Positions 12,495-57,579 of a DNA stretch of 64,000 nucleotides are shown here, in pieces. The stretch spans positions 60,033-124,032 of the forward strand of contig NIVC01002615.1 of assembly GCA_002269645.1 (NCBI GenBank), written 5' to 3'. A program made the translations under genes and the position numbers. The notes beneath the pieces are model-generated. The model saw only the letters and a list, made by a program, of their open reading frames with translations, made no database searches and was not told where the DNA came from. The stretch is from Macrostomum lignano (lineage: Eukaryota). The first letter of the stretch is position 1. Every line of letters starts with the position of its first letter.

Positions 12495-12798
12495 GACATT
12501 TTTTATTCAGATGACGCAGGCTGGCACGGCGCCTTAGCAACAAACTAGTTAAACTGACTGAGAGGTGAATCTTCTTGGATTCATTCTGTCTCTGCATTAG
12601 GTACATCAGGTACTTACCATCGTGAGTCTTGATATGGGTTCTCAGATTGCAGAGCAGGGTGAAGCGCTTGGAACAGACTGTGCACTCGTGACGCTTTTCA
12701 CCTGTTAAGATAATTTAAGAGAATTGTCTAATTAAATTGTGATTATTGTCTATTCATAAGATGCCGAATAGTATCATCCATTCACTGACTAGAATACG

Positions 12799-13210
12799 TA
12801 GTCTATGGCTACTAGCTGGAATAGTCTATGGCTACTAGCTGGAATAGTCTATGGCTACTAGCTGGAATAGTCTATGGCTACTAGCTGGAATAGTCTATGG
12901 CTACTAGCTGGAATAGTCTATGGCTACTAGCTGGAATAGCCTATGGCTACTAGCTGGAATAGTCTATGGCTACTAGCTGGAATAGTCTATGGCTACTAGC
13001 TGGAATAGTCTATGGCTACTAGCTGGAATAGTCTATGGCTACTAGCTGGAATAGTCTATAGCTACTAGCTGGAATAGTCTATGGCTACTAGCTGGAATAG
13101 TCTATGGCTACTAGCTGGAATAGTCTATGGCTACTAGCTGAAAGTCTATAGCTACTAGCTGGAATAGTCTATGGCTACTAGCTGGAATAGTCTATGGCTA
13201 CTACCTGGAA
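12799..13210. repeat. 23-bp tandem repeat TAGTCTATGGCTACTAGCTGGAA
   Basis: About 18 near-identical copies immediately left of the foldback element. Confidence 0.97.
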
Positions 13211-13251
13211 TGATGGACTTAATAACAAAATCCCCAATCCAGCTAAAGGGG

Positions 13252-16200
13252 ATGTCAACTTAAGCACCAGAATGGAGCCCGAAGTTCAGCTCCGGACCAA
13301 ACCGACTGCAATCGATAACTTGTCGGCCCAGACGACTAGAATCGCCGAGACATCCCATCCGGCTCCCTTCCTTGGGGTCCCAGGGGATAAAGGGGATAAA
13401 ATGGGGATCTCATGTCAACTTAAGGCTCTGGAATGGAGCCCGAAGTTCAGCTCCGGACCAAACCGACTGCAATCGATAACTTGTCGGCCCAGACGACTAG
13501 AATCGCCGAGACATCCCATCCGGCTCCCTTCCTTGGGGTCCCAGGGGATAAAGGGGATAAAATGGGGATCTCATGTCAACTTAAGGCTCTGGAATGGAGC
13601 CCGAAGTTCAGCTCCGGACCAAACCGACTGCAATCGATAACTTGTCGGCCCAGACGACTAGAATCGCCGAGACATCCCATCCGGCTCCCTTCCTTGGGGT
13701 CCCAGGGGATAAAGGGGATAAAATGGGGATCTCATGTCAACTTAAGGCTCTGGAATGGAGCCCGAAGTTCAGCTCCGGCCCAAACCGACTGCAATCGATA
13801 ACTTGTCGGCCCAGACGACTAGAATCGCCGAGACATCCCATCCGGCTCCCTTCCTTGGGGTCCCAGGGGATAAAGGGGATAAAATGGGGATCTCATGTCA
13901 ACTTAAGGCTCTGGAATGGAGCCCGAAGTTCAGCTCCGGACCAAACCGACTGCAATCGATAACTTGTCGGCCCAGACGACTAGAATCGCCGAGACATCCC
14001 ATCCGGCTCCCTTCCTTGGGGTCCCAGGGGATAAAGGGGATAAAATGGGGATCTCATGTCAACTTAAGGCTCTGGAATGGAGCCCGAAGTTCAGCTCCGG
14101 ACCAAACCGACTGCAATCGATAACTTGTCGGCCCAGACGACTAGAATCGCCGAGACATCCCATCCGGCTCCCTTCCTTGGGGTCCCAGGGGATAAAGGGG
14201 ATAAAATGGGGATCTCATGTCAACTTAAGGCTCTGGAATGGAGCCCGAAGTTCAGCTCCGGACCAAACCGACTGCAATCGATAACTTGTCGGCCCAGACG
14301 ACTAGAATCGCCGAGACATCCCATCCGGCTCCTTTTCTTGGGTCCCAGGGGATAAAGGGGATAAAATGGGGATCTCATGTCAACTTAAGGCTCTGGAATG
14401 GAGCCCGAAGTTCAGCTCCGGACCAAACCGACTGCAATCGATAACTTGTCGGCCCAGACGACTAGAATCGCCGAGACATCCCATCCGGCTCCCTTCCTTG
14501 GGGTCCCAGGGGATAAAGGGGATAAAATGGGGATCTCATGTCAACTTAAGGCTCTGGAATGGAGCCCGAAGTTCAGCTCCGGACCAAACCGACTGCAATC
14601 GATAACTTGTCGGCCCAGACGACTAGAATCGCCGAGACATCCCATCCGGCTCCCTTCCTTGGGGTCCCAGGGGATAAAGGGGATAAAATGGGGATCTCAT
14701 GTCAACTTAAGGCTCTGGAATGGAGCCCAAAGTTCAGCTCCGGACCAAACCGACTGCAATCGATAACTTGTCGGCCCAGACGACTAGAATCGCCGAGACA
14801 TCCCATCCGGCTCCCTTCCTTGGGGTCCCAGGGGATAAAGGGGATAAAATGGGGATCTCATGTCAACTTAAGGCTCTGGAATGGAGCCCGAAGTTCAGCT
14901 CCGGACCAAACCGACTGCAATCGATAACTTGTCGGCCCAGACGACTAGAATCGCCGAGACATCCCATCCGGCTCCCTTCCTTGGGGTCCCAGGGGATAAA
15001 GGGGATAAAATGGGGATCTCATGTCAACTTAAGGCTCTGGAATGGAGCCCGAAGTTCAGCTCCGGCCCAAACCGACTGCAATCGATAACTTGTCGGCCCA
15101 GACGACTAGAATCGCCGAGACATCCCATCCGGCTCCCTTCCTTGGGGTCCCAGGGGATAAAGGGGATAAAATGGGGATCTCATGTCAACTTAAGGCTCTG
15201 GAATGGAGCCCGAAGTTCAGCTCCGGACCAAACCGACTGCAATCGATAACTTGTCGGCCCAGACGACTAGAATCGCCGAGACATCCCATCCGGCTCCCTT
15301 CCTTGGGGTCCCAGGGGATAAAGGGGATAAAATGGGGATCTCATGTCAACTTAAGGCTCTGGAATGGAGCCCGAAGTTCAGCTCCGGACCAAACCGACTG
15401 CAATCGATAACTTGTCGGCCCAGACGACTAGAATCGCCGAGACATCCCATCCGGCTCCCTTCCTTGGGGTCCCAGGGGATAAAGGGGATAAAATGGGGAT
15501 CTCATGTCAACTTAAGGCTCTGGAATGGAGCCCGAAGTTCAGCTCCGGACCAAACCGACTGCAATCGATAACTTGTCGGCCCAGACGACTAGAATCGCCG
15601 AGACATCCCATCCGGCTCCTTTTCTTGGGGTCCCAGGGGATAAAGGGGATAAAATGGGGATCTCATGTCAACTTAAGGCTCTGGAATGGAGCCCGAAGTT
15701 CAGCTCCGGACCAAACCGACTGCAATCGATAACTTGTCGGCCCAGACGACTAGAATCGCCGAGACATCCCATCCGGCTCCCTTCCTTGGGGTCCCAGGGG
15801 ATAAAGGGGATAAAATGGGGATCTCATGTCAACTTAAGGCTCTGGAATGGAGCCCGAAGTTCAGCTCCGGACCAAACCGACTGCAATCGATAACTTGTCG
15901 GCCCAGACGACTAGAATCGCCGAGACATCCCATCCGGCTCCTTTTCTTGGGGTCCCAGGGGATAAAGGGGATAAAATGGGGATCTCATGTCAACTTAAGG
16001 CTCTGGAATGGAGCCCGAAGTTCAGCTCCGGACCAAACCGACTGCAATCGATAACTTGTCGGCCCAGACGACTAGAATCGCCGAGACATCCCATCCGGCT
16101 CCCTTCCTTGGGGTCCCAGGGGATAAAGGGGATAAAATGGGGATCTCATGTCAACTTAAGGCTCTGGAATGGAGCCCGAAGTTCAGCTCCGGACCAAACC

Positions 16201-16756
16201 GACTGCAATCGATAACTTGTCGGCCCAGACGACTAGAATCGCCGAGACATCCCATCCGGCTCCCTTCCTTGGGGTCCCAGGGGATAAAGGGGATAAAATG
16301 GGGATCTCATGTCAACTTAAGGCTCTGGAATGGAGCCCGAAGTTCAGCTCCGGACCAAACCGACTGCAATCGATAACTTGTCGGCCCAGACGACTAGAAT
16401 CGCCGAGACATCCCATCCGGCTCCCTTCCTTGGGGTCCCAGGGGATAAAGGGGATAAAATGGGGATCTCATGTCAACTTAAGGCTCTGGAATGGAGCCCG
16501 AAGTTCAGCTCCGGACCAAACCGACTGCAATCGATAACTTGTCGGCCCAGACGACTAGAATCGCCGAGACATCCCATCCGGCTCCCTTCCTTGGGGTCCC
16601 AGGGGATAAAGGGGATAAAATGGGGATCTCATGTCAACTTAAGGCTCTGGAATGGAGCCCGAAGTTCAGCTCCGGACCAAACCGACTGCAATCGATAACT
16701 TGTCGGCCCAGACGACTAGAATCGCAGAGACATCCCATCCGGCTCCCTTCCTTGGG
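13252..16756 (+). repeat. 161-bp satellite array (~22 copies)
   Basis: ATGGAGCCC recurs every 161 bp (13272, 13433, 13594...16652), with one 1-bp deletion near 14340. Confidence 0.99.
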
Positions 16757-17324
16757 CTGACTGAAACTCCTCTCGCTGGCCTCTAAACTGTTGCTCAGTA
16801 GGCTTTCGCTGCTGTGGTAAAGCGTTTTCTCTAGCATAAAGTCTGGCAACAAGGCTGCGTGGAAGAGCGAAATCAACAAAGCGAAGGCCGGCACCAGACC
16901 TTCGATAGCTACATATGTATCTTGGTGGTAAGCGTAGCAGCCCAGGAGTTTGAGCACTGCCATTACGCTCGTACATGACAATCGCAGCCTGCAGTCCTAC
17001 TTCCTGCTTTTGCTGACGAGTAGAAGCCAGGAAGAAGTTGCAATCCTGGATCTCTAAAACCAAAGCGATTGTCCGCTGCTGTCACACACTCTAAGAATCA
17101 CGCGGTAGGATTTTGAATTATGGCGCGAGAAAACGACAAAATCAAATCAAGAAAAATCAAGACGGATGCCACCGACCGAATCGGTTGCTCCAGTTTTCTA
17201 GCGGCGTCGCTTGCCGAAACTTCCAACACTCCCGGCGGCTTGGATGTGTAAATCAAAGTCTCTCCAGGAGTCACCTTCGTAGCTATCGAGAACCTCCTTG
17301 ACACGAATGTTTTGAATGTAATAA

Positions 17325-18059
17325 TCGTCTGGGCCGACAAGTTATCGATTGCAGTCGGTTTGGTCCGGAGCTGAACTTCGGGCTCCATTCCAGAGCCTTA
17401 AGTTGACATGAGATCCCCATTTTATCCCCTTTATCCCCTGGGACCCCAAGGAAGGGAGCCGGATGGGATGTCTCGGCGATTCTAGTCGTCTGGGCCGACA
17501 AGTTATCGATTGCAGTCGGTTTGGTCCGGAGCTGAACTTCGGGCTCCATTCCAGAGCCTTAAGTTGACATGAGATCCCCATTTTATCCCCTTTATCCCCT
17601 GGGACCCCAAGGAAGGGAGCCGGATGGGATGTCTCGGCGATTCTAGTCGTCTGGGCCGACAAGTTATCGATTGCAGTCGGTTTGGTCCGGAGCTGAACTT
17701 CGGGCTCCATTCCAGAGCCTTAAGTTGACATGAGATCCCCATTTTATCCCCTTTATCCCCTGGGACCCCAAGGAAGGGAGCCGGATGGGATGTCTCGGCG
17801 ATTCTAGTCGTCTGGGCCGACAAGTTATCGATTGCAGTCGGTTTGGTCCGGAGCTGAACTTCGGGCTCTATTCCAGAGCCTTAAGTTGACATGAGATCCC
17901 CATTTTATCCCCTTTATCCCCTGGGACCCCAAGAAAAGGAGCCGGATGGGATGTCTCGGCGATTCTAGTCGTCTGGGCCGACAAGTTATCGATTGCAGTC
18001 GGTTTGGGCCGGAGCTGAACTTCGGGCTCCATTCTGGTGCTTAAGTTGACATCCCCTTT
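17325..18059 (-). repeat. Inverted 161-bp array (~4.5 copies)
   Basis: Reverse complement of the same unit (ORF-track starts at 17388, 17549 and 17710 on the minus strand). Confidence 0.99.
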
Positions 18060-18968
18060 CTGGATAGCAGATATGAATTAGGACTCAAATTGCAAAACAA
18101 GAAACCTGAGAGCAAAAAACGGACAAAGGGCCCTATCTGAGCACCGGGGCTCTGACGTTATTAATTACAGACCTGCAATTAATTGCGCCACCAGACTTTG
18201 CCCTTCTCACCCTGTCCCGCCCTAAAATCAAGTAATAATCACTTTCCCTGAAATCTGGAACTTTGCACGCCCATCTGTTGAAGCTGGCGAGATGGAATCA
18301 GAGGCTACAGGACCCTGAATAAATCACTTAAGACATTTCTTGTACCATCTTCCACAGCACCTTCTCCTGGCTTGCCTGCCTGTCTGTCTGGCGCTTTCCC
18401 AGAAAGATTGCGCACCTACTGGCCTGCTCACCCAATGCATGAGATCAGCAAAGAGCTGGGAGACCCATTGCATCATCACAGCTCTGGACTCGTCACGGAA
18501 GGAGCTGCTCAGTCCTAAAGACATTTGGGGGAGTGGGGTTCAATCCCAATATTTAATTCGGCGTGAAAACCAAGGTTTTAATGGACTCGGGGTGCAAAAA
18601 AATGAGACTATTATTCTTCGCTCCGTGTCCGCCATCGGTCAAATATTTTCCTACTTAACATTTGCTTAAGCTATTCAGATTTCCGCTTCGAAATTGGGGG
18701 CTTTTCTGCTTCATAAAGTAGGAATAATTAGCCTCGGCTTGGTCTGAAATTGAAAGTTCATTATCAACTAATAGCCTGGGGTGTCTGCGGAGCATTCAGC
18801 TTCATGCTTCATCTTAATTCCTTACTTGACTTGCTTTCCCTTTCTATGAACTACTCTCCTTCCCCATCTTCCCCTCTCTGTCTTCCCCTCTCTGTCTTCC
18901 CCTCTCTGTCTGTCTATCTGCATCCACAGTTTTCATTACTGAATAATCGGCAATGATGAAACCCTCAC

Positions 18969-19304
18969 CTGTATGCAGCAGCAGGTGATTCTTCAAGTTG
19001 GTCTGCTTGCTAAATCCGCGGCCGCACTCGTCGCATTTGAAGGGCCACCGGCCGCTGTGCACGTACAAATGGCTGCGCAGGTCACCGGGAGTTGGGAAAC
19101 TCTTGTGACACACCTGGCACTTGTGCGGCTTCTCCTTGCTGTGCGTCATGCGGTGATAGTACAGATTGGAGCTCGCAGTGAAGCGCTTGCCGCACACTGG
19201 GCACTGGTGCGGCCGCTCACCCGAGTGGATCCGGCGGTGAGTGTTCAGCGAGGAGGACGTGCTGAAGGCTTTGTTGCACTCCTCGCAGACGTGCGGTTTT
19301 TCGC
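18969..19304 (-). CDS. C2H2 zinc-finger exon (fingers 2-5) of the PRDM-type gene
   Basis: GEKPHVCEECNKAFSTSSSLNTHRRIHSGERPHQCPVCGKRFTASSNLYYHRMTHSKEKPHKCQVCHKSFPTPGDLRSHLYVHSGRWPFKCDECGRGFSKQTNLKNHLLLHT; acceptor ctcAG at 19305, donor GTGAG at 18968. Confidence 0.95.
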
Positions 19305-19399
19305 CTGAGTGAGGGTGAGGATTCAGTTCGATCAGGGTAGATCAGAGTACGGACTGACCTTTGATTTCTGTATGTTAATGAACATTAGAGTTTTCTTAC

Positions 19400-20231
19400 C
19401 GGTGTGCGTCCGCATGTGACGCTGCAGTAGCGAAGGCCGGTCGAACTTTTTGCCGCACACTGAGCACGGCAGCAGGACCGTCTCGCGGCGCTTGCTCTGC
19501 ACTCGACGGCGCGGCTGCTGCTGCGGCTGTCCCGGCGCTTGGAGACCGGCATCTCCGGTTACTTCCCCGTCTCCGTGATCAAACTGATGCAGCAGATTCC
19601 GTCGAGCTGTACTATCGAAATCGGTGTCATCTGCATCGTTGAGCTCGTCGGGATCTTGCTCAGCATCATCATCTTCATCGGCGTCCTCATTGTCGATTCG
19701 ATCGTTGACTTCTTCAACGGTTGCATCATCGGCTTCGTCTTCAAGATGCTGCGACTGCTGATGCAGCTCTTCCACGAGCGGCGGCAGGCGACTTTGATCG
19801 GCGACTCCAGCGTGGTGGCTCTCCGTCGGGCTGGAATCCGTCGACGCCAGGTCCGACTGTCCCAGGCCCGAGTCGCGGGGCTGCTGCTGATGCTGCTGCT
19901 GTTGTTGCTGTTGCATTGCGGTCTGCTGCTGCTGCTGCTGATCGAGCTGCCTGTGAATCTTCTGCGGCGAAGGCGTCGTCACCGCAGCAGCAGCCGCCGC
20001 TGCAGCCGCCGCGGCTGTCGTGTCGCAGTAGAAGATTTTCAACGGATCGCCTGGCTGCAACTGTTGAATGGCCTCGTACGTGACCTTCTCGCGCTGCCGC
20101 ACAGCCAGTAGGTTGGCAGCCGACGGGTGCTGAACGGGCAGCGCCAGTCGAATCCAGTTGCAGTGCCAGACCAGGCGGCCGTCCGATGCGCTTCTCTCCC
20201 AGCTCTGGACGCAGCCGAAGTCTCTGAGTCT
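19400..20231 (-). CDS. PR/SET-domain remnant, acidic/poly-Q linker and zinc finger 1 (PRDM family)
   Basis: The frame extends upstream of the listed ORF to NWIRLALPVQHPSAANLLAVRQREKVTYEAIQQLQPGDPLKIFY, matching the PR motif NW.R....NL.a.q....iyY......pG.eL.v.Y. It ends CSVCGKKFDRPSLLQRHMRTHT|GTAAG (phase 1). The acceptor at 20232 is tentative and no upstream exon was found. Confidence 0.88.
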
Positions 20232-20304
20232 CTGCCAAGCGAATGAACGAGCAGAATAAATGATAGAATTGGAGAGTTTCCGAGACCGGATACAGTCAGT
20301 CCGG

Positions 20305-20318
20305 CTTTATATATATAG
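20305..20318 (-). promoter_or_regulatory. TATA-box-like element upstream of the PR exon
   Basis: CTATATATATAAAG on the minus strand, ~75 bp upstream of the putative acceptor. Confidence 0.4.
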
Positions 20319-27729: not shown

Positions 27730-28371
27730 CTACTCGTCTTTCTGCTTGTTTGGGCCTTCGTTATCGCCGCTATTCAAAGCTTCATCAGCTTGTTCAGCTT
27801 CTCCAGCCTCGTCAGCTGCGGCAGCAGAGGTGCGGCTCGACTCTCCGCCAGCAGCAGCAGGCAGAAGCAGGCGGTTTTTGTACCAGCGGCGCAGCTGGCT
27901 GACCAGCAGCAGCGGCAGGTTGACAACTCGGGCCATGCGGTTCCTGGACACCAGCATGAACCACAGAGACTCCTCCAGCAGCCGGCGGCTCATCGCCGGA
28001 CTAGTAATCCAGACCAGAGCTAGGAAGAGTCCGCAAGCAGCCGAGGTTGCTATGGCAACAGAGATTAGCGCTAGACTGCCGGCCGCCAGGTCCAGAGCTT
28101 CACCTGTGAGCTCCTCGTAGGTGTTCAGCCCCTCCTGGCCGAGATGGCGGCGACAGGCGCGGGATCGGCAGACTCGCCTGCGGAGAACCTCATTATCCGG
28201 GGTGGCGTTGCGGCAGCTTTCCAGCGAGTCGAGCAGGCAGGTGCGGCTGCTGGTTTGGTGGCGCACCAGGCCGCAGGGCGGTTCGCAGTGGGACCAATCC
28301 GACCAGGCGGTGAACAGATAGATCGGATCACGCTGGCTGCACAGGCCATCCTTTTCCAGCACTCGGCCGGC
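27730..28371 (-). CDS. Terminal exon of the WSC/EGF/TSP1 membrane protein: EGF end, TSP type 1 repeat, TM helix, cytoplasmic tail
   Basis: AGRVLEKDGLC...WSDWSHCEPPCG...SRTC...C (TSP1), then the hydrophobic SLALISVAIATSAACGLFLALVWIT; phase-0 acceptor cttcttAG at 28372. Confidence 0.9.
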   Translation of the reverse strand, partial: AGRVLEKDGLCSQRDPIYLFTAWSDWSHCEPPCGLVRHQTSSRTCLLDSLESCRNATPDNEVLRRRVCRSRACRRHLGQEGLNTYEELTGEALDLAAGSLALISVAIATSAACGLFLALVWITSPAMSRRLLEESLWFMLVSRNRMARVVNLPLLLVSQLRRWYKNRLLLPAAAGGESSRTSAAAADEAGEAEQADEALNSGDNEGPNKQKDE

Positions 28372-28414
28372 CTAAGAAGCGATCAGACGTAGCAGATGTG
28401 CATTTTGCATTGCG

Positions 28415-28838
<424 letters not shown>

Positions 28839-28859
28839 ACTAATAAACACAGTTACAAC

Positions 28860-29162
28860 CTTGCACAAGCAGCGCCAGCCTCCATTGGGTGTGTCAGTAC
28901 AGATGCCCTCGCCGCAGAAGACGTTCTTACAAGCGCTCGATTCCTTTAGGCAGTTCTCAAACGGTAGCGAGGTGTCTGGCTGCGATTTACCTCGGCAGCC
29001 GCACGTGTAAGGGATGTGGGGCACAACAGGTGCATCCGAGCCGCTGAAAGCGTTGAAGCATACATTGCGCTCCGATTCGGGCTGTAGCGCTTGCACGAAA
29101 CAGGCCGAGTTTCCCATCTTTATGGTATCGCTTTTCCTCGTGCCCGCGTTTGATTCGCATCC
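28860..29162 (-). CDS. Cys-rich/EGF exon of the membrane protein
   Basis: GCESNAG...ACKNVFCGEGICTDTPNGGWRCLCK|, joining in phase 0 to AGRVLEKDGLC to complete an EGF module. The acceptor is preceded by a CTAAT branch-like motif. Confidence 0.8.
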
Positions 29163-29585: not shown

Positions 29586-31410
29586 CGTCAGATTCACCGT
29601 GCAGTGCTCGCCCGTAAAGTCTGGCCTGCACACGCAGGACACGTCGTCTTCTAAAGACTTCACTAACACTTGGTTTGTCCTGCCCAAATTGCATTTGTTC
29701 ACGGTCTTATTGAATGTTCTGTAGAAGATGGTGCGCATCCAGGTGTCCCAATAAGCGTACCGGGCTCGCACCTGGCTATCAAGGTCCAATGTAAGACCGG
29801 ACTCGAATTCACCGTGTAGCAGGCCCTGAAGAAGGCGCCTGACGCTTGGCCGCGCTGATGCTGTTAGCACGGGAATGCGGATCTCGCCTCGATGCGTGTC
29901 AATCTTTGTTAAACCGAACAAGCCAGCCATGTCAGCCAATTCGATCTTCTCTGGTGGCAAATTTGCGTTCGGTCGGAGGCTGATACTGTTTACAGTCTCC
30001 AGATGATCGGGGCACTCGTACAGAATGCTAAGGTTATAAAATCCAGGCTGCTTTAGTAAACTCGGATAGCATTCAACGCTTTCGGGTAGCATTAGCAAAT
30101 TAAGCTGATAAACTGGCGAGTGATCCTCGTTGCCGCAGTTTTTCACATCTTCTATACTGTCGCAATACGTTAAAGTCTGGTCGCAAACAGTTTTGCTGTA
30201 TGCTAACGACAGCTTTTTCGTGTCAGCAAAGCAAGCGCACCGCAGATCGTTAAGTCTTTGACTAAAAAAATTGTGTATAACTTCTTTAGCTGCTTTCTAC
30301 ACTTCTTTATGCACTGGGCATGACTGTTTGTGTGCTCTGATTCCACGCCTTTGATGTTGAAGCAGTTATTTGTTGTGGGATATGGCATCAGGATGCTGGG
30401 CATTGCGGATCTGAGAGTGCAGTTAGTTGATAAGAATAGCTTATAAGCGTAGTAGAAGCGTGACTCTGCCATCAACATTAGGGAACCACCTTCTTGAGCT
30501 AGATGCTTGCCAGCCTGTAGGAATTTGTCTAGATCTTTGTCGTATTGTGTCTGTGTTGGAACTGCTTTTTCATGGGTTGAAGGGTTGACCATAATAATTG
30601 GGAAAACTCTTGCCGCTCTTAAATCCGCGATTGCTTCGTCAAGTGAGTCCTTTTTCTCTAAACAATGCATACCAGCCACTGGAGTTATTTTGTGAAACTC
30701 TCCGTCTGCCACGCACAAGCAGTATGGTGCAGGGCAGGTCTTTGGGCCGCATATAAGGAACTTGAACACACAATTGGGGCTAGAGCAAGATTTAGCGCAT
30801 TCGTACTCGCACAGGTCGTGATGCCGAAGTTTAAGGCCGCCAATCAGCCTGGTTAGCCAGAAAAAATTACTTTTAGTCTTTTTGTGCTCAAAATCCTGCC
30901 CAATGAAAGAATAGCAACCGTTGTACTGTGTGTGTTGTTTTTCTTTTTTAATCATAAAAACGGTGTAGGTGGAACCAAATCCGGCGTGGCCCTGCAAATG
31001 ATTTCTCCATGAGAATGGATAGTAAATGCTTCCTGGAGCATCATGCACTGCGTAATAATCGAGCCGGTACACATTACCCCTATGGGGAGCATAGCTACCG
31101 GCTCGGATCATTTGCTTGAGGCGCGTCGGCGGCTCATTCGAGCAATAGCAGTTCTCCCCAGACAGATACGCATACACTGCGCACCTGTCCTCGCAGATAC
31201 GAAAGCATTTTTCACCAACTGCGCCACCGCCACCTCCACCACTTTTAATCGAAGTCGATAAAATTATGTTATTGGATAATGGAGGCAGCTCTTCCAAAAA
31301 AAACCAGCCGAGTCCATTCTTTAATCTAATTGTTCGAATGTCAAGCCGTATATCACCCAAAACCTTACTAGTTGATTCGGGCACTTTGTAAAAATCTAGT
31401 GGCAATTTGG
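29586..31410 (-). CDS. Large exon with WSC-like modules and an EGF; apparent 1-bp frameshift at 30264-30270
   Basis: ORFs 30203-31405 and 29562-30146 join across an A7 run to give CIKKCRKQLKKLYTIF(F)SQRLNDLRCACF. Also contains YNGCY, CFRICEDRCAVYAYLSGENCYC and SCVCRPDFTGEHC. Phase-1 acceptor at 31411, GTGAG donor at 29585. Confidence 0.85.
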
Positions 31411-31520
31411 CTGAAATGGAAAAAAGTAGTTAGGAAAATTCGAAATCAAATTTCTTTTAAATGTAGAGGTTAAACTTGATGGAATAGATTTCTCTGTGTA
31501 GGAGCATGCATATCACTTAC

Positions 31521-32236
31521 ATTTTATCTTATTCATGGCGCAGTTCTCGAGAGCCATTTCTCCCATGTAGTGCAAAGCGATGCTGTTATCGTCTAGACCC
31601 ACAGATATTGAATGCGGTCTAACAGCACGATCGGGAAATGTCGAACAATTGCCTGTTTTGAGAGGCACCTCTGCCAATAGTTCAACTTTGTTGGTGCAGT
31701 AGCAGTAGATGCTGCTTAGGGCAAAATAACTCATACAGGACATCTGGCAAAAGATGCGACATTTGATCGGGTCTTTCTGAGAAATTCTTACCAGTTTATC
31801 AGTGATGACAATTTCATTGTGATAGTTATCACCAAGCATTGAGTCTCGCTGCAGTCTAGCGGGGTTGATCCAATGGTATCCGTCAATGCTAGTGTTGGCG
31901 CCGTGGTTCCATGGAAGCGTCACTTTATTACCCAATGAAGAACTAAAAGTACCTTCAAACCTTATGAAATCTATGCTTTCATTGAGCTTGCCCAATTTTA
32001 ATTTATGCTTATCTCCCAGTGTCACACATTGGTACGAATAATGTTGCCTACCGCCGCACTTCGGAACCTCTCGCTTCAGCATGAACGCTTTGTAGTGTTT
32101 CACACCGCCGCACCACCAGTCAGTCCTGTGCTTGCACAGACGGCCGCAGGGCGCCGGAGCAGCAATAGGTGTTTCGAACGCAAAACCGGAAGAGCAAAGG
32201 CAAGCACGCGATGATAAAAACATAACGTTGCTGCAT
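31521..32236 (-). CDS. WSC-like exon of the membrane protein
   Basis: CSNVMFLSSRACLC...PCGRLCKHRTDWWCGG (WSC C-terminal motif) and KCRIFCQMSCMSYFALSSIYCYC; phase-2 acceptor at 32237, GTAAGT donor at 31520. Confidence 0.88.
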
Positions 32237-32519
32237 CTAAAATGAGTGTTTGACGGTTGCGATGTACATTAGAGTAGAATAGGGTAGTGCAATTGACTAA
32301 ACTAGAGAAATATGATTTATGATTAGAACTATTAGAAATGGCATGAACTTTTTCTCAATCAATATAAAGTCAATTATGCCCTCATAAATTAATTCATGCA
32401 ACATGCCACGGAAATTTGAATTAATTTTACTAACTGGGAGCCAATAACTTAGTCTAACTTAGGCAGCTCATTATGCTCTAGGTTTCTGTGCACCTATCTC
32501 CACTGAGACAGACGAGACG

Positions 32520-33386
32520 AGAGAGGAGAGGCGAGAGATGGGAAGAGAAAAGATAGAAGACAAGATTAGAAAAGAGGGGGAGAGAAGAGAGGAGAGAGGA
32601 GAAAGGAGAGGGGAGAGCGGAGAGAAGGGAGAGCGGAGAGAAGAAGGGAGAGTGGAGAGAAGAAGTGATAGGGGAGAGAAGAAGGGATAGGGGAGAGAAG
32701 AAGTGATAGGGGAGAGAAGAAGTGATAGGGGAGAGAAGAAGGGATAGGGGAGAGAAGAAGTGATAGGGGAGAGAAGAAGTGATAGGGGAGAGAAGAAGTG
32801 ATAGGGGAGAGAAGAAGTGATAGGGGAGAGAAGAAGGGAGAGCAGAGAGAAGAAGGGAGAGCGGAGAGAAGGGAGAGTGGAGAGAAGAAGGGAGAGTGGA
32901 GAGAAGAAGTGATAGGGGAGAGAAGAAGGGATAGGGGAGAGAAGAAGGGATAGGGGAGAGAAGAAGTGATAGGGGAGAGAAGAAGGGATAGGGGAGAGAA
33001 GAAGGGATAGGGGAGAGAAGAAGGGATAGGGGAGAGAAGAAGGGAGAGCAGAGAGAAGAAGTGATAGGGGAGAGAAGAAGGGATAGGGGAGAGAAGAAGT
33101 GATAGGGGAGAGAAGAAGGGATAGGGGAGAGAAGAAGTGATAGGGGAGAGAAGAAGGGATAGGGGAGAGAAGAAGGGAGAGCAGAGAGAAGAAGGGATAG
33201 GGGAGAGAAGAAGGGAGAGCAGAGAGAAGAAGGGATAGGGGAGAGAAGAAGGGAGAGCAGAGAGAAGAAGGGATAGGGGAGAGAAGAAGGGAGAGCAGAG
33301 AGAAGAAGGGATAGGGGAGGGAAGAAGGGAGAAAGAGAGAGCTGAAGCGAGACAAACCTTAAGCGGGCCGAGTTTGCCGACCCCTG
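32520..33386 (-). mobile_element. Truncated hAT-like MITE with an expanded GA-rich minisatellite (~24-bp units)
   Basis: The minus strand begins CAGGGGTCGGCAAACT (33386-33371), a Charlie-type TIR, followed by CTTAAGGTTTGTCTC..CTTCAGCTC resembling the 48330 copy. The other end was not found. Confidence 0.65.
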
Positions 33387-33632
33387 TATTAAAGGGTTAG
33401 CCTTTACCGACAATAATGACCTTGAGAAATTCTCATCTAAGGATAGAACGTCTTCTTTTCGGAATCAATACAGTTTGTCAAAGGGAAGAGACAAAATATG
33501 CTAGGCATAAGCGTGGCTTGTTGGTACGTCCCATTTTTAAATCATAAATCACATAAAGACACTACTACACAGGGGTTGCACACTAACTACACTTAAGCGT
33601 ATAGCCCATGCAACGCTATCAATGGCACTTAC

Positions 33633-34317
33633 CGTCTTTGGCAGATTAGTAAGCACTTGGTAAAGTCACCCTCTCGGACCCTGCTGTGCAAACTATACTC
33701 TGATTTCAATGTCGAATACGAATTGATGCAAATGTCGGTGAGACGCACATCCTGCCAGGGCATTTCCCTCCTGACAGTTTCAACATCATTTCCGGGCAAG
33801 CTGGAGATGACCATGCGTGGCGGCCAGATTGCGCAACCCTTAAAGTACGCGGAGCAGGTGTACCAATGGGCACCTGGACATGCGCCTTCCTTACTGACAT
33901 TGAACCCAGCTGAGAGCGGTTTGCCGTCATGTGAGAATGCGTTGGAATTTAAGCTGCAATGACATAAACCACCAGTTGCAGTGTGACTCATCAGAACATA
34001 ATTGCAGGTGCTGGAATTCAAGCATTCATTCAAGCATTCCTTCGGTCGCATTTTTGGCAGGGTAGACAAATCGAGAAAGTCCACATTTAATAAATAGTCT
34101 GTTTCCTTCATCCCCAACGAACAGTATGAGTGTGCGTAGATGGTGTGCACGCGTTCCACCAAAATCGGATGCGGCAGATCCACTGACACAATTGGGTCAG
34201 GGTCAGCTGCAGGGATGCCGCCAAGCTTCATCCAATTCGACCGCATGCGCCTGGCGATTCTCAGCGTTGAGTAGGCGTCGTGTCCAAACGGATGGAATCT
34301 GGTCTCGGGATTTAGTT
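33633..34317 (-). CDS. Exon 2 of the membrane protein (possible F5/8C-like segment plus WSC-like modules)
   Basis: Phase-1 acceptor ttcgcttacAG matches the exon-1 donor; contains PIVSVDLPHPILVERVHT, ECLNECLNSSTCNYVL..CHC and YFKGC; GTAAGT donor at 33632 (phase 2). Confidence 0.85.
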
Positions 34318-34429
34318 CTGTAAGCGAAGATGGGAGACGCAATTACGCTGCTGAGCAGGCGAAATTTTACTTACAACTCAGGTGTCTTCTGGCACACTTT
34401 CTATGAACAGAGGCCGCACAGTCCGACAC

Positions 34430-34745
34430 AGAGGCCGCACACTACTACACAGTGGCTGCACACTACTACACAGGGGCTGCACACTACTACACAGGGGCTG
34501 CACACTACTACACAGGGGCTGCACACTACTAGACAGGGGCTGCACACTACTAGACAGGGGCTGCACACTACTACACAGGGGCTGCACACTACTACACAGG
34601 GGCTGCACACTACTACACAGGGGCTGCACACTACTACACAGGGGCTGCACACTACTACACAGGGGCTGCACACTACTACACAGGGGCTGCACACTACTAC
34701 ACAGGGGCTGCACACTACTACACAGGGGCTGCACACTACTACACT
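34430..34745. repeat. 21-bp tandem repeat CACTACTACACAGGGGCTGCA
   Basis: About 15 copies, intronic. Confidence 0.97.
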
Positions 34746-35070
34746 GGGGCAGCACTACATCTACTCAACGATCTCAATGAAGAATCCCTGCAGAATGAAG
34801 TTAAAGATGTACTTTTAAAAAATTAAGGCTTGAAACCGGAGAGCAATGCGCAAGAGCTGGTGTAGACGCTAAAAACCGAACACACTCTTCATCCAGTATT
34901 CGTCTTTGACGACACCGGTTCATCCTTTTTGAGCCCGATGCCCTTATCGTCAGCAGGTGATAGTTTCATGGATGCGACTAGTGTTTTTCGACTTTCGACA
35001 AACAGACAACGCTCTTTATAGTATTTATTCGTACAAAGACACCACACGTTCAAACAAGGTCTACTTTTTA

Positions 35071-35103
35071 CCATAGACTATATATAGACAGAGTCCGAGA
35101 GAG

Positions 35104-35191
<88 letters not shown>

Positions 35192-35409
35192 ATTGTGTTC
35201 AAGTGAGGAGTACATACCATATTTCCCATTTAATTCGGCTGTCTATGGGGTAGGGCTGCTGCAGCCACAGCTATTCATAATACGAGTACATGTTGAGTTA
35301 TGGTACTTTTAAATCTATTTTATTTACTCTATAAAGAGTATTATTCTTATCTTTTCTTTCAATTGCTACTGTAATGCTAGAGTGCAGCAAGAAGCCATAT
35401 AGTCTATGG
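35071..35409. mobile_element. Small MITE with CCATAGACTATAT TIRs and TTA flanks, carrying a (GA)n(GT)n microsatellite
   Basis: CCATAGACTATAT at 35071 and ATATAGTCTATGG ending at 35409, with TTA on both sides. Confidence 0.7.
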
Positions 35410-35475
35410 TTATAATACGCTGCGGCTGGATAATGCTAGAATGGCAGAAAATGCTACATCTAGGCAATATAGAAT

Positions 35476-36172
35476 CAAGGACGACTTAAGTAGAAGGACG
35501 GGAAACCTCGTTTCTTAGAAAAGTTTTGAAGGCACTTTTTCCCAAAAAAATACACTACGGAGATAGGAAGTTTTCATTTTTTCAGCACAAAAATTGTTAT
35601 TGCGTTTGATAGGAGGCAGATCCAGTGTTCATCTTTTGATATGTTGTGCCTTTTTTATTGCTCTATCTATATTTATAAAGCTTTTCGTTCAGAAAATTAG
35701 GATTCTATGTTAATTTTTTATTCTACGTATATTTCCTGTATCTAAAAATCACAAAAATGCATGACACAGCTCCAATATTTGGTTTTATGAATCTATTTTA
35801 TCATCTCTGTTACAAATATTTGCTACACAGTCGGATAAGAATGATAAAAAAGACTCATGAAGCTAAAGAGCCGAGCCGTGGCATTCTAATGTATTTCAAG
35901 CACAAGACACGCGAAAATATACGTAGAATAAAAAATTAACATAGAATCCTAATTTTCTGAACGAAAAGCTTTATAAATATCGATAGAGCAATAAAAAGGC
36001 ACAACATATCAAAAGATGAACACTAGATCTGCCTCCTATCAAACGCAATAACAATTTTTGTGCTGAAAAAATGAAAACTTCCTATCTCCGTAGTGTATTT
36101 TTTCGGGAAAAAGTGCCTTCAAAACTTTTCTAAGAAACGAGGTTTCCCGTCCTTCTACTTAAGTCGTCCTTG
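35476..36172. mobile_element. P-element-like MITE: ~259-bp TIRs, 180-bp spacer, 8-bp TSD TATAGAAT
   Basis: CAAGGACGACTTAAG... / ...CTTAAGTCGTCCTTG; TATAGAAT at 35468-35475 and 36173-36180. The arms differ at only about 3 positions by eye. Confidence 0.9.
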
Positions 36173-36515
36173 TATAGAATCTGTGATAAAATGTGCATTC
36201 AGTTGTTTGCTCTAACTGAAAAGATAATCGCGGCCATAGACTATAAGTTTTAATACTAAAGCTGTAATAAGCTTGAAAGCTCCCAGGGAAACCAGAATCA
36301 CTTGAACATAAGCCAACAGTAACTGTTTAACTCGAACTTTTTCGTGCATTAGCCCACAAGCTCTGGTCAAACTTGCATGGAGCTCTTGTGTTTTGCACAT
36401 CAATGCTGAGAATCCAAAGTTTTTTCACCTTACAATCGCAATAAGCATTATCAGCCATCGCCAATCATCATTAATCATAATTTCATGCCCTCGTATAATA
36501 TAAAACAGAACTCAC

Positions 36516-37422
36516 CAAAAGTTTTGAAGGTCCTGCCCTTCGAAGATTTACTGTAGAACCCGGCGCGCAAAATTGGCAGCTTAGTGTCGATGAAGATATT
36601 TAGCGAGTCAATGCTGATCCTCAACTTGTTGCGCAATCTCAAGGTCATGAAGAAGTCCTTTTCTTCGCTGCAACTCAGCGTATTAATATCCCAGTAGTAG
36701 CCAGGGCGGCAGTTGCAATTGAAGCTCCGGCGCCAGATCCGGGAATTCTGGGTGCAGATTGGGTTTTCCAGATTCTCGGTGACCTGCACGCAGGGATTGC
36801 AGTCGCGATTTCCGCTCGGACACTTGTCAGCGTTGTTGTACAGTCGCCCAGATTTGCATGGGTTCGGGCAGCGATTGTACAGGTCCTTGTCAATTGCATC
36901 GATGCGAGACATTGCGTCGCAATAGGCAAAATGGTACATCTGGGTCAAGAGGTCCTGACGCTCTGACCTATCGGCCTTGATGCCGCTTGAGGCCAGCACC
37001 CTTTCAAACTCCATGAACGTTTCCAGAAACCGGGTAGTGAAATGAAAAAGCAAAAAGTTTAGTCTTTTTTCATTGACGGTTTTGGCTACAGGTAGGTACG
37101 CCATTCGCTTGTCTTGAATCACCAAATCCGGCACTATTCTCGTAGCGTTCATATAATTTTCCTCAAACAGAAATCCGTCCATGAATCGGCGCACCCAGGG
37201 CAGCCAGCGCATCCTGTCGGAAAGTTTCTCGGTGCTGTTTCTATAGACGCCATCAAAAATACCGACTGGCAGTTCGGCCGTGCCAACTAAACCGTATTCG
37301 AAGCCGCTGTGCAGCCGTTTGGTAATTTCCGAGTTCTTTGGATACTGGATAAAGTAGTGGTGCACTAGGCAGTTAGCCACTGCTGCGGCTCCCAGCAGGG
37401 CTAAAATTCGAGCGAGCAGCAT
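36516..37422 (-). CDS. First exon of the WSC/EGF/TSP1 membrane protein: signal peptide and EGF-like module
   Basis: MLLARILALLGAAAVANC signal peptide; CPNPC...CNPC...C...FNCNCRPGYYWDINTLSC; canonical phase-1 donor TTTG|GTGAGT at 36515. Confidence 0.88.
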
Positions 37423-40637: not shown

Positions 40638-40736
40638 TGCCCCATTCAGCGCGGCTCGCACAATTCTTTGCCCCCATTTCTGTTCGCAATACCGCAGTCT
40701 CCAGGCGACATCCTTCAACTACAACCAATAAAGAGA

Positions 40737-57473: not shown

Positions 57474-57579
57474 GTGAGTAACCTCCTAGTTGAATTCGGA
57501 TTTCATGCCAGTTTTGCTGGGCAACCATTGAGTGATTATTTGGCTGCATTTTTGCTAAACCAATTCCCCCCTTTGACAG

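What the first reader, a model, noticed from the sequence alone, without database searches (positions are those of the whole stretch)
13245..18059. Foldback-like element whose arms are tandem arrays of a 161-bp TIR-derived unit
Unique inverted termini (AAAGGGGATGTCAACTTAAGCACCAGAATGG) cap ~22 direct units on the left and ~4.5 inverted units on the right, around a 570-bp spacer. Each unit repeats the terminal GGGGAT motif three times (GGGGATAAAGGGGATAAAATGGGGAT), as expected for multimerised transposase-binding sites. Units are nearly identical, so the expansion is recent or homogenised. The architecture parallels Drosophila FB/Galileo foldback elements and satellite birth from TIRs; this family is not one I recognise.
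Basis: partly seen in the sequence, partly recalled or inferred. Interest (0 to 1): 0.8.

Follow-up and report, generated by a model that had tools for sequence, protein, structure and literature searches.

The report
Foldback-like inverted satellite arrays in flatworm intron
An intron of a Macrostomum lignano (flatworm) PRDM-type zinc-finger gene holds a 4.8-kb structure built from two inverted arrays of a 161-bp repeat; it looks like the foldback transposons known from flies, but I could not show that it moves.

Summary
The left array is 13252-16756 (21.8 x 161 bp, 99% identical). The right array is 17325-18052 (4.5 units, inverted). A 568-bp non-coding spacer lies between them. The 31-nt terminus occurs only at the two tips. 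Both tip units share four changes that no internal unit has, so the two ends are copies of each other.

New findings:
- The inverted repeat extends 6 nt further out (ATCCAG/CTGGAT).
- There is no target-site duplication of 3 bp or more at the inverted-repeat tips, and none of 4 bp or more at any plausible boundary pair.
- The left arm grew in place by an 8-unit block duplication.
- The window is Macrostomum lignano contig NIVC01002615.1.
- The structure fills 77% of a 6.3-kb intron of an unannotated PRDM-type gene. The same intron is about 0.9 kb in a distant orthologue.

The anatomy matches foldback-like elements (Drosophila FB, Tetris, Galileo) in four structural features. The TSD criterion fails. 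Copy number and transposase could not be tested, because no tool here searches the flatworm genome. I found no other copy in the window, in two homeologous 20-kb loci, or in the public collections.

Best reading (about 0.5): a non-autonomous foldback-type element or its relic, a new member of a known kind. A locally made inverted duplication is the main rival. Interest is moderate to low.

The parts
13237..13244 (+). Outer extension of the left inverted repeat: ATCCAG (13237-13242) plus a 2-nt CT (13243-13244) that has no partner on the right.
   Evidence: Sequence read. ATCCAG is complementary to CTGGAT at 18060-18065. The chance of such a 6-nt match within 0-3 nt of both tips is about 0.005.
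13245..13411 (+). Left tip: prefix AAAGGGG followed by terminal unit L01 (13252-13411, 160 bp). L01 is a variant with four private changes: 13G>-, 16T>A, 18T>C, 19G>A.
   Evidence: The same four changes occur in R01 and in no internal unit.
13412..16756 (+). Left arm interior: units L02-L21 (20 full 161-bp units; L07 is 160 bp) plus L22, which is truncated at unit position 126. 14 of the 21 full left-arm units (L01-L21) equal the consensus. Variant 46A>C is in L04 and L12. Variants 117C>T and 120C>T are in L07, L15 and L17.
   Evidence: The 8-unit spacing of both variant classes points to a block duplication of about 1.29 kb.
16757..17324 (.). Middle domain (spacer): 568 bp, 48.6% GC, unique in the window, not palindromic, with no recognisable coding capacity.
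   Evidence: ORFs are 115 aa or shorter. No Pfam match at E<=1. The two longest ORFs are not on record as proteins. No other copy in the window. Only scattered 9-mer self-inverted matches.
17325..17892 (-). Right arm interior: R05 (17325-17409, 85-bp partial), R04 (17410-17570), R03 (17571-17731) and R02 (17732-17892, private change 24G>A).
17893..18059 (-). Right tip: terminal unit R01 (17893-18052, 160 bp) plus prefix AAAGGGG (18053-18059, read on the minus strand). R01 has the same four private changes as L01. It also carries 46A>C, 117C>T and 120C>T, which are seen in some left-arm internal units.
18060..18065 (-). Outer extension of the right inverted repeat: CTGGAT.
12702..18968 (-). Host intron (6,267 bp) of a PRDM-type C2H2 zinc-finger gene. 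It contains the structure (4,829 bp including the extensions), the 23-bp minisatellite at 12799-13211 (413 bp) and 1,025 bp of other sequence.
   Evidence: Donor ACAG|GT at 18969/18968 and acceptor AG|GT at 12702/12701. Joining the exons gives ...HLLLHTG|EKRHEC... in frame. The orthologue in L002 has an intron at the same position, about 0.9 kb long.
18969..19304 (-). Host exon B, encoding zinc fingers 2-5. It lies upstream of the intron in gene orientation.
   Evidence: 81-86% aa identity to L002. zf-C2H2 match in Pfam.
12618..12701 (-). Host exon C, encoding zinc finger 6 (EKRHECTVCSKRFTLLCNLRTHIKTHDG). It lies downstream of the intron.
   Evidence: zf-C2H2_6 at E=1e-5. 57% aa identity to L002 10470-10553.

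Best explanation
The structure is a non-autonomous foldback-type DNA element, or the immobile relic of one, sitting in an intron of a PRDM-type gene of Macrostomum lignano.

Its two ends are a matched pair of inverted termini: ATCCAG(CT)AAAGGGGATGTCAACTTAAGCACCAGAATGG.... Each arm is a head-to-tail array of one 161-bp monomer that runs to within 7 nt of the tip. The 568-bp middle carries no gene.

Proposed history:
1. An element with short arms, roughly 4-5 monomers each, came to lie in the intron.
2. The left arm then grew in place to 22 monomers by unequal exchange or replication slippage. This included one 8-monomer block duplication.
3. Exchange within and between arms kept the monomers almost identical.

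If the element is or was mobile, it would have to be moved in trans by a transposase encoded elsewhere. The phased GGGGAT triplets in every monomer are the obvious candidates for repeated binding sites.

Shown: the anatomy, the matched tips, the in-place expansion, the lack of coding capacity and the intronic position. Inferred: insertion as a unit, mobility, and any role of the GGGGAT motifs.
For: 1. The tips are copies of each other. L01 and R01 share four private changes found in none of the 25 internal units. The 20-mer terminus occurs only at the two tips.
2. The inverted repeat ends 8 nt (left) and 6 nt (right) beyond the arrays. Element ends defined by sequence would explain this. A random inverted duplication would not be expected to end there.
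3. The arms are tandem arrays of unequal length around a non-coding middle. This is the published anatomy of Tetris (PMC4079207) and Galileo (PMC3573991). In both, the two TIRs of one copy can differ in repeat number.
4. In-place growth is visible. Variants recur at an 8-unit spacing: L04/L12 and L07/L15.
5. The host intron is 6,267 bp here and about 0.9 kb at the same position in the orthologue in L002. Without the structure and the minisatellite it would be 1,025 bp.
6. This is the only array in the window with a unit longer than 103 bp. It is by far the strongest inverted array pair (z=204; the next is 7.5).
7. The arms differ by 0.7%, while the homeologous loci differ from the window by 1-9%. 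So the arms are young or homogenised.
8. Missing TSDs do occur in real foldback-like elements. Twelve chimeric Galileo copies have non-matching flanks.
Against: - There is no target-site duplication. Nothing of 4 bp or more appears over a 22 x 22 boundary grid, although chance alone gives such a match in about 70% of random grids. Nothing of 7-11 bp appears with one mismatch. At the tips there is only a 2-bp CT.
- Only one copy is known. There is none elsewhere in the 64-kb window and none in the homeologous loci L001 and L003. There are no exact hits to four different 25-28-nt pieces of the unit or terminus in the metagenome, prokaryote-genome or viral collections. None of those collections covers flatworm genomes.
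- There is no transposase, integrase or RT domain in 118 non-satellite ORFs of the window.
- The termini match no superfamily signature that I could test.
- M. lignano makes and remodels tandem arrays at a very high rate. Arrays cover 33% of this window and 13% of the genome, so a purely local origin is not far-fetched.
Confidence: 0.5

Rival explanations
1. Local inverted duplication. A 161-bp minisatellite arose in this intron. Its left edge (4.5 units plus a few flanking bases) was then copied in reverse orientation 568 bp downstream by replication template switching or fold-back repair. Nothing ever transposed.
For: - There is no TSD.
- The flanks just outside the arrays are inverted copies (ATCCAG/CTGGAT), not direct repeats. 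That is what a duplication carrying a little flank would give.
- Only one copy is known.
- Arrays change quickly in this genome. The 30-bp array has 74 copies in the window, 12 in L001 and none detected in L003.
- A second, older pair of related arrays in inverted orientation lies in the same window.
Against: - The duplicated segment would have to end only 6-8 nt beyond the array edge, on a scale of kilobases. That coincidence has no mechanistic reason behind it.
- The spacer is not palindromic, and the inner ends fall at different unit positions. So this is not a simple hairpin-primed palindrome.
- R01 carries three variants that L01 lacks but that occur deeper in the left arm. A simple recent copy of the left edge does not explain that without later exchange.
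Confidence: 0.22
2. Two independent insertions. The arms are two separate insertions, in opposite orientation, of an array-bearing element that has one defined end (...GTTGACATCCCCTTT(AG)CTGGAT) and one variably truncated end. Examples would be a 5'-truncated retroposon whose 3' region is a tandem array, or a rolling-circle element. Under this view the 568-bp 'spacer' is ordinary intron.
For: - The inner ends are ragged and differ between arms: unit position 126 on the left, 85 on the right. The outer ends are identical.
- The spacer has no feature tying it to the arms.
- A LINE-like CCHC ORF elsewhere in the window (53610-54161) shows that retroposons are present.
Against: - Two hits by a family that is otherwise absent from 64 kb, landing 568 bp apart and tip-outward, is improbable.
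- Reading the four junctions, I saw no TSD around either arm taken separately. One search tested only the two outer boundaries.
- There is no poly(A) or other 3'-tail signature at the defined end.
- There is no RT domain nearby.
Confidence: 0.12
3. Assembly artefact. The inverted right arm was produced by a chimeric (missed-adapter) long read or by mis-joining within a repeat.
For: - Mlig_3_7 is a long-read-based draft of a very repeat-rich, partly triplicated genome that its authors describe as hard to assemble (PMC5730564).
- Array copy number, 22 in particular, is the kind of figure assemblies get wrong.
Against: - A missed-adapter palindrome is symmetric about its centre and also inverts the flanks. 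Here the arms are 3,512 and 735 nt, the centre is 568 bp of non-palindromic unique DNA, and the outer flanks are different unique sequences.
- The flanks belong to one coherent gene model that is confirmed by an orthologue.
- There are no Ns.
- The whole structure is 4.8 kb, which I expect (not checked here) single long reads to span.
- Simply flipping the right part would not place a matched variant tip unit at both outer ends.
Confidence: 0.06
4. Selected hairpin-RNA locus. The structure is maintained because transcription of the host intron yields a long perfect hairpin that feeds a small-RNA pathway, for example to silence the 161-bp family. This concerns function and is compatible with any of the origins above.
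For: - Both arms lie in one intron on the transcribed strand.
- A 1.4-kb slice folds into an almost uninterrupted stem of about 300 bp, at -537 kcal/mol with DNA parameters.
- The full arms could pair over 735 nt with 5 mismatches.
Against: - No expression or small-RNA data are available here.
- The gene is not even in the deposited annotation.
- The 22-to-4.5 unit asymmetry and the rapid array turnover look like neutral drift, not a maintained hairpin.
- No Rfam family matches.
Confidence: 0.05

Closest known systems
Tetris, a foldback-like non-autonomous element of Drosophila virilis and D. americana (Dias et al. 2014, PMC4079207)
   Same: - Long TIRs containing a variable number of satellite-length tandem repeats (about 220 bp in Tetris, 161 bp here).
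- Repeat number differs between the arms and between alleles.
- A non-coding middle domain.
- No autonomous copy known.
- Arrays that expand inside the element.
- Repeats that share sequence with the outermost TIR part.
   Different: - Tetris TIRs have a unique outer flanking domain of up to 866 bp and an inner domain. Here the array starts 7 nt from the tip.
- Tetris copies have 8-10-bp TSDs. None is present here.
- Tetris repeats are about 70% AT and 87-94% similar to each other. These are about 54% GC and more than 99% identical.
- Tetris was shown to be multi-copy by BLAST and FISH. That could not be tested here.
- Sequence homology was not tested. The hosts belong to different phyla.
Galileo, a P-superfamily element with foldback-like long TIRs (Drosophila; PMC3573991, PMC3688188)
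   Same: - Internally repetitive long TIRs.
- 0-3 or 4 copies of an internal repeat of about 210 bp.
- Independent expansion of the two TIRs.
- The longest TIRs occur in non-autonomous copies.
- Some copies lack matching TSDs.
- Tandem repeats carry secondary transposase (THAP) binding sites. This is the model behind the GGGGAT idea.
   Different: - Galileo has a known transposase and a 7-bp TSD.
- Its repeats lie hundreds of bp from the end.
- Its repeat number is small, up to 3-4, against 22 here.
- There is no evidence here for a THAP- or P-type transposase.
- Protein binding to GGGGAT is untested.
Drosophila melanogaster FB (Foldback) elements (own knowledge: Potter 1982; Truett et al. 1981; as cited in PMC4079207)
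   Same: - The arms are built almost to the tip from tandem repeats.
- The arms of one element are often unequal.
- The middle is variable or absent.
- Single strands snap back readily.
   Different: - FB repeat units are short (10-31 bp, from own knowledge), not of nucleosome length.
- FB makes a 9-bp TSD (own knowledge). None is present here.
- The FB family is abundant and demonstrably mobile.
Satellite-like arrays carried by mobile elements in bivalves (Helentron-associated arrays in Crassostrea gigas, PMC7492417)
   Same: Short arrays of roughly 160-bp monomers, embedded in a mobile-element framework and scattered in gene-rich DNA. I know this from the titles and abstracts listed.
   Different: Those arrays are single direct arrays inside rolling-circle elements, not inverted pairs. 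I saw no Helitron-type end features when reading the termini here. I did not read that paper in full.

Membership tests
Foldback-like transposable elements (structural class: FB, Tetris, Galileo-type) | Long terminal inverted repeats, hundreds of bp to more than 1 kb | tested here: met
   738-nt arms pair at 99%. There are 5 mismatches in 735 nt when registered from the tips. The terminus 20-mer is unique to the two tips.
Foldback-like transposable elements (structural class: FB, Tetris, Galileo-type) | TIRs internally composed of tandem direct repeats, with a number that may differ between arms | tested here: met
   21.8 versus 4.5 copies of one 161-bp unit.
Foldback-like transposable elements (structural class: FB, Tetris, Galileo-type) | Variable middle domain that is non-coding in non-autonomous copies | tested here: met
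   The spacer is 568 bp with ORFs of 115 aa or less. There is no Pfam hit at E<=1. The two longest ORFs are not on record as proteins.
Foldback-like transposable elements (structural class: FB, Tetris, Galileo-type) | Target-site duplication flanking the element (7-10 bp in Galileo, Tetris and FB) | tested here: not met
No exact direct repeat of 4 bp or more over a 22 x 22 grid of boundaries. None of 7-11 bp with one mismatch or fewer. The flanks are inverted copies instead.
Foldback-like transposable elements (structural class: FB, Tetris, Galileo-type) | Several dispersed copies sharing the termini (evidence of transposition) | not testable with these tools
   No tool searches the M. lignano genome. 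There is no other copy in the window or in the homeologous loci L001 and L003. The metagenome, GTDB and viral scans gave 0 hits. The unit ORF has no protein hits.
Foldback-like transposable elements (structural class: FB, Tetris, Galileo-type) | A cognate transposase encoded by autonomous relatives | not testable with these tools
   There is none among 118 non-satellite ORFs of the window.
Tetris (specific family) | Three-domain TIR with a unique outer flanking domain (TIR-FD, up to 866 bp) outside the tandem repeats | tested here: not met
   The array begins 7 nt from the tip, or 15 nt from the extended tip. The definition comes from PMC4079207.
Satellite DNA (strict sense) | Head-to-tail array of monomers of about 150-200 bp with high inter-monomer identity | tested here: met
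   161-bp unit at 99% identity. 14 of 21 full left units are identical.
Satellite DNA (strict sense) | High genomic abundance, or long arrays at one or more chromosomal sites | not testable with these tools
   Only 3.5 kb plus 0.7 kb are seen here. The literature searches found no M. lignano satellite of this sequence.
MITE | Small size (usually under 800 bp) with short TIRs and a TSD | tested here: not met
   The structure is 4,815-4,829 bp and has no TSD.
Hairpin-RNA (endo-siRNA) locus | Both arms of a long inverted repeat lie in one transcript | tested here: inconclusive
   Both arms lie in one intron of a gene model built from splice sites and orthology. No transcript data are available.
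Hairpin-RNA (endo-siRNA) locus | Small RNAs map to the paired arms | not testable with these tools
   No small-RNA data are available here.
Ribozyme-bearing satellites or retrozymes, and other structured-RNA repeats | The monomer matches a known RNA family or has a significant fold | tested here: not met
   No Rfam match at gathering threshold across the window. None at E<=1 on 13200-13900. The monomer fold has z = -1.3.

The most novel reading that the evidence does not exclude
This could be the first visible copy of a flatworm foldback family whose arms are built right to the tip from a nucleosome-length monomer. Elements of this kind could be one of the engines behind the unusually high tandem-repeat load of the M. 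lignano genome (13%). A second, degraded inverted array pair in the same window would then be an older example. Because this copy lies in an intron, it would also produce a perfect double-stranded RNA of about 735 bp from the PRDM pre-mRNA, linking the birth of a satellite to small-RNA control.
Probability: 0.12. Interest if true: 0.6.

Novelty: new member of a known kind. Interest (0 to 1): 0.35.

Why it matters
If this is a real mobile family, it extends foldback-type elements with satellite-length arm repeats to Platyhelminthes. My literature searches found no such element described there. It would also give a concrete example of an array growing from about 5 to 22 monomers inside an element.

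M. lignano is a regeneration and transgenesis model. Its genome is hard to assemble because of tandem repeats (PMC5730564), so knowing what seeds those arrays has practical value.

A 4.8-kb near-perfect inverted repeat inside a PRDM-type gene is also a likely site of instability and of double-stranded RNA formation. The three homeologous copies of this region allow a direct presence/absence test.

If the structure is only a local inverted duplication, it is a curiosity in a genome full of array turnover.

Tried and rejected
1. **Structured RNA or ribozyme satellite.** No Rfam match at gathering threshold or at E<=1. No tRNA genes. The monomer fold is not significant, z = -1.3. Rejected.
2. **Coding repeat.** The 122-aa ORFs in the array come from a stop-poor unit. 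They have no homologues among 5.8 billion protein clusters. Rejected.
3. **Transposase remnant in the spacer or a transposase nearby.** No Pfam hits in the spacer ORFs or in 118 window ORFs. The spacer ORFs are not on record.
4. **Other copies through DNA scans.** Four different 25-28-nt pieces gave 0 hits in metagenome contigs (twice), GTDB genomes and IMG/VR. These collections do not cover flatworm genomes, so the result says little.
5. **Sequence strings in paper full text.** The only hit was an unrelated mouse paper.
6. **The 23-bp minisatellite as a proxy for the empty site.** The two flanks joined through CT resemble its unit (AGCTGG-ATAG). This reaches only P = 0.015-0.04 and the idea was post hoc. 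The flanks alone are not significant, and 22% of random 46-mers score as well. Not used as evidence.
7. **Reaching the homeologous PRDM introns.**
   - I found that L001 and L003 are diverged copies of the region.
   - I reconstructed the window's 636-aa neighbouring gene exactly.
   - Its 90% cluster has one member.
   - The representative search returned only the query itself and one distant protein.
   - No gene is annotated between it and the structure.
   - The PRDM gene is not in the protein collection.
   - The 10-kb flank limit could therefore not be bridged.
8. **Earlier error, corrected.** I first took the window to be NIVC01000309.1. It is NIVC01002615.1.
9. **piggyBac/Kolobok-type reading.** The internal CTTAAG would be a TTAA target under this reading. 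I rejected it because the same GTCAACTTAAG is part of every internal unit.

Full report

Yes. TRF reports a 161-bp array at 13252-16756 (21.8 copies, 99% matches). It reports the same unit in reverse orientation at 17325-18052 (4.5 copies, 98%). An anchor 13-mer recurs every 161 bp. The exceptions are the 160-bp tip unit on each side and unit L07, which has a 1-bp deletion. The terminus AAAGGGGATGTCAACTTAAG occurs exactly twice in the 64-kb window, once at each tip on opposite strands. Shuffled sequence gives zero matches even with three mismatches allowed. The outermost 738 nt of the two sides are 99% complementary, with five mismatches in 735 nt when registered from the tips. The spacer is 568 bp. 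Each unit ends in GGGGATAAAGGGGATAAAATGGGGAT.

**2. Fine anatomy**

I split both arms into units and compared each with the majority unit.

- 14 of the 21 full left units are identical to the consensus.
- The two tip units, L01 and R01, share four changes (13G>-, 16T>A, 18T>C, 19G>A) that none of the 25 internal units has. The two ends are therefore copies of one another. They are not two array edges that decayed independently.
- R01 also carries 46A>C, 117C>T and 120C>T. On the left arm these occur only in internal units: 46A>C in L04 and L12, and 117C>T with 120C>T in L07, L15 and L17. The arms therefore share a pool of variants.
- The 8-unit spacing (L04 to L12, L07 to L15) shows that a block of about 1.29 kb was duplicated inside the left arm.
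- The inner ends are ragged. The left arm stops at unit position 126 and the right arm at position 85.
- The GGGGAT motifs start 10 and 11 nt apart, about one helical turn. There are 64 on the plus strand of the left arm, and 13 copies of the complement ATCCCC on the plus strand of the right arm. Outside the structure there are 4 GGGGAT and 16 ATCCCC in 59 kb.
- The single unit has no fold beyond chance, z = -1.3. It matches no Rfam family.
- The spacer is 48.6% GC and not palindromic. It has ORFs of 115 aa or less with no Pfam match at E<=1.
- A 1.4-kb slice across the spacer folds into an almost uninterrupted stem of about 300 bp, at -537 kcal/mol.

**3. The ends**

ATCCAG (13237-13242) pairs with CTGGAT (18060-18065), and the left side has an extra CT. 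A 6-nt inverted match within 0-3 nt of two random positions occurs with probability of about 0.005.

I searched for direct repeats over a 22 x 22 grid of boundary choices. None of 4 bp or more exists, although random grids give one about 70% of the time. None of 7-11 bp exists with one mismatch. There is therefore no target-site duplication.

If CT is treated as a 2-bp duplication, the empty site would be ATCCAGCTGGAT, a perfect 12-bp palindrome. I leave this unexplained. An attempt to use the neighbouring 23-bp minisatellite as a proxy for the empty site gave only post-hoc P values of 0.015-0.04. I do not rely on it.

**4. Where it sits**

An EF-hand ORF in the window is 100% identical to a Macrostomum lignano protein. 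Exact look-ups place the window at the last 64 kb of contig NIVC01002615.1 of assembly GCA_002269645.1, with window position = record position - 60,032. The structure is therefore at about 73,277-78,091 of that contig.

Two other contigs, NIVC01000309.1 (L001) and NIVC01002258.1 (L003), carry diverged copies of window 31.5-49.9 kb. They are 88-99% identical and have different array lengths. This is expected for a neopolyploid genome with three subgenomes (PMC10733133).

One third of the window is tandem arrays. The genome as a whole is 13.1% tandem repeats and 3.05% DNA transposons (PMC5730564 Supplementary Table 4).

**5. The host gene**

On the minus strand there is a PR-domain plus C2H2 gene.

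- The exon-A ORF spans 19335-20306, and its coding part ends at 19400. It contains a PR-domain match and finger 1.
- Exon B (18969-19304) encodes fingers 2-5.
- Exon C (12618-12701) encodes finger 6.
- The donor at 18968 and the acceptor at 12702 are canonical. Joining the exons gives ...HLLLHTG|EKRHEC..., the standard finger linker.

The intron is 6,267 bp. The structure takes 4,829 bp, the 23-bp minisatellite takes 413 bp, and 1,025 bp remain.

A Logan contig from an unidentified organism with 33% GC (L002) carries the orthologue. It has a PR domain upstream, exon B at 81-86% aa identity and exon C at 57%. Its intron lies at the same position and is only about 0.9 kb. That confirms the gene model and shows the M. 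lignano intron is greatly enlarged.

The gene is absent from the protein collection. No gene is called in the 10 kb to its right on this contig.

**6. Search for relatives**

Every search was negative, and none of them covers the flatworm genome.

- The unit ORF has no protein homologues.
- Exact scans with four pieces of the unit or terminus gave 0 hits in metagenome contigs (twice), GTDB genomes and IMG/VR.
- There is no diverged copy of the unit, terminus or spacer elsewhere in the window or in L001-L003.
- No transposase, integrase or RT domain appears in 118 non-satellite ORFs.
- No paper in the searchable library describes a foldback element or a 161-bp satellite in Macrostomum or other flatworms.

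I tried to walk to the homeologous PRDM introns, which would give an empty-or-filled-site test. I reconstructed the neighbouring 636-aa gene exactly. Its homeologue of 1,171 aa could not be retrieved. No nearer gene is annotated. The 10-kb flank limit therefore could not be bridged.

**7. What it most likely is**

The best-supported reading (confidence about 0.5) is a non-autonomous foldback-type element or its relic. The points in favour are these.

- The tips are a matched pair that differ from the interior.
- The inverted repeat ends within 6-8 nt of the array edges.
- The arms are unequal tandem arrays.
- The middle does not code for anything.
- The structure accounts for most of an intron that is otherwise small.

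The left arm then grew in place; the 8-unit duplication shows this directly. The arms differ by 0.7%, while homeologous unique DNA differs by 1-9%. So the structure, or at least its homogenisation, is recent relative to subgenome divergence. Mobility, insertion as a unit, and any role of GGGGAT as repeated binding sites are inferences.

**8. Rivals**

- **Local inverted duplication of an array edge (0.22).** It explains the missing TSD and the inverted flanks. It does not explain why the copy ends only 6-8 nt beyond the array.
- **Two independent tip-outward insertions of a one-ended array-bearing element (0.12).** It explains the ragged inner ends. It requires an unlikely double hit, and I saw no TSD around either arm when reading the junctions.
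- **Assembly artefact (0.06).** A missed-adapter palindrome would be symmetric and would invert the flanks. Here the arms are 3,512 and 735 nt, the centre is unique, and the flanks belong to one coherent gene confirmed by an orthologue.
- **Selected hairpin-RNA locus (0.05).** This concerns function, is compatible with any of the origins, and cannot be tested here.

**9. Comparison with known systems**

Tetris is the closest in anatomy (PMC4079207). It is foldback-like and non-autonomous, has 220-bp tandem repeats inside its TIRs, a non-coding middle, and arrays that expand into satellite DNA. It differs in having a unique outer TIR domain of up to 866 bp and 8-10-bp TSDs. This structure has neither.

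Galileo shows that the two TIRs of one copy can expand independently, that some copies lack matching TSDs, and that repeats inside TIRs can carry verified transposase-binding sites (PMC3573991, PMC3688188). Galileo has a known P-type transposase, a 7-bp TSD and at most 3-4 repeats per TIR.

Drosophila FB shares the feature that repeats run to the tip, but its units are short (own knowledge).

Four structural criteria of the foldback class are met. The TSD criterion is not met. Copy number and transposase could not be tested. I therefore describe the structure as foldback-like in architecture, without filing it as a proven member of any transposon family.

**10. Verdict**

If the structure is a mobile element, it is a new member of a known kind. 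It would apparently be the first such element noted in a flatworm, as far as the searchable literature shows. Interest is moderate to low (0.35), because foldback-like elements and satellites born from transposons are well established. Its value lies mainly in the clean example of in-place array growth, and in the simple presence/absence test that the three homeologous copies of this region make possible.

Noticed in passing
window 39330-40169 and 43217-45482 (also L001 8575-9506 and 12229-12598; L003 8742-9539): There is a second pair of related arrays in inverted orientation. It flanks a 3-kb segment that contains the EF-hand gene (40668-41135). The 30-bp unit aligns to the reverse complement of the 46-bp unit with a 15-nt gap; the shared pieces are CGGAGTGACAGAT, TACTGA and GTG. 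It is the second-strongest relation among all array pairs in the window (z=7.5). The 46-bp array is present in all three homeologues. The 30-bp array has 74 copies in the window, 12 in L001 and none detected in L003.
   Followed up: partly
window 12618-20306, minus strand: An apparently intact PRDM-type gene (PR domain plus six C2H2 fingers) is missing from the deposited annotation and from the protein collection. Its finger exons are 81-86% identical in protein to an orthologue on Logan contig SRR14633898_23421, which comes from an unidentified organism with 33% GC.
   Followed up: partly
window 30203-37422, minus strand; L003 1-5452: The annotated 636-aa gene (PAA56492.1, Mlig014286g2; exons 31521-32223 and 30203-31410) is probably a truncated model. 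The homeologue on NIVC01002258.1 is annotated at 1,171 aa and starts with a signal-peptide exon. The equivalent upstream ORFs are intact in the window (36475-37422, 315 aa; 33629-34342, 237 aa).
   Followed up: partly
window 1-64000: 31 tandem arrays cover 33% of the window. Apart from the 161-bp arrays, their basic units are 2-46 bp, with TRF higher-order periods of 62-173 bp. Base composition is strongly strand-asymmetric in blocks: the plus strand is C/T-rich over 1-10 kb and G/A-rich over 24-34 kb.
   Followed up: no
window 28415-28842: A (TAC)143 microsatellite, 96% pure, lies in frame within a minus-strand ORF (28383-29117). It reads as about 140 serines next to an EGF-like cysteine pattern, just upstream of a TSP1-plus-transmembrane ORF (27730-28362). 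I did not determine whether it is exonic.
   Followed up: no
window 12799-13211: A 23-bp minisatellite (18 copies, 97%) ends 33 bp from the left tip of the structure, in the same intron. Its unit contains AGCTGGAATAG. This resembles the two flanks of the structure joined through CT (AGCTGGATAG), but only at a post-hoc P of 0.015-0.04.
   Followed up: yes
window 53610-54161, minus strand: This ORF contains a CPFC...H...C motif ([25 protein letters not shown]). By eye it resembles the C-terminal zinc knuckle of non-LTR retrotransposon ORF2 proteins. It has no Pfam hit.
   Followed up: no
window 55808-57812, plus strand: A divergent TGF-beta-family ligand gene. The C-terminal cystine-knot exon matches PF00019 at E=1.3e-5, just below the gathering score.
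   Followed up: no
window 13230-13252: One GGGGAT motif in inverted orientation (ATCCCC, 13230-13235) lies 9 nt outside the left tip (18 nt upstream of the first GGGGAT motif). The local sequence reads ATCCCC-AATCCAGCTAAA-GGGGAT. There is no counterpart on the right flank.
   Followed up: no
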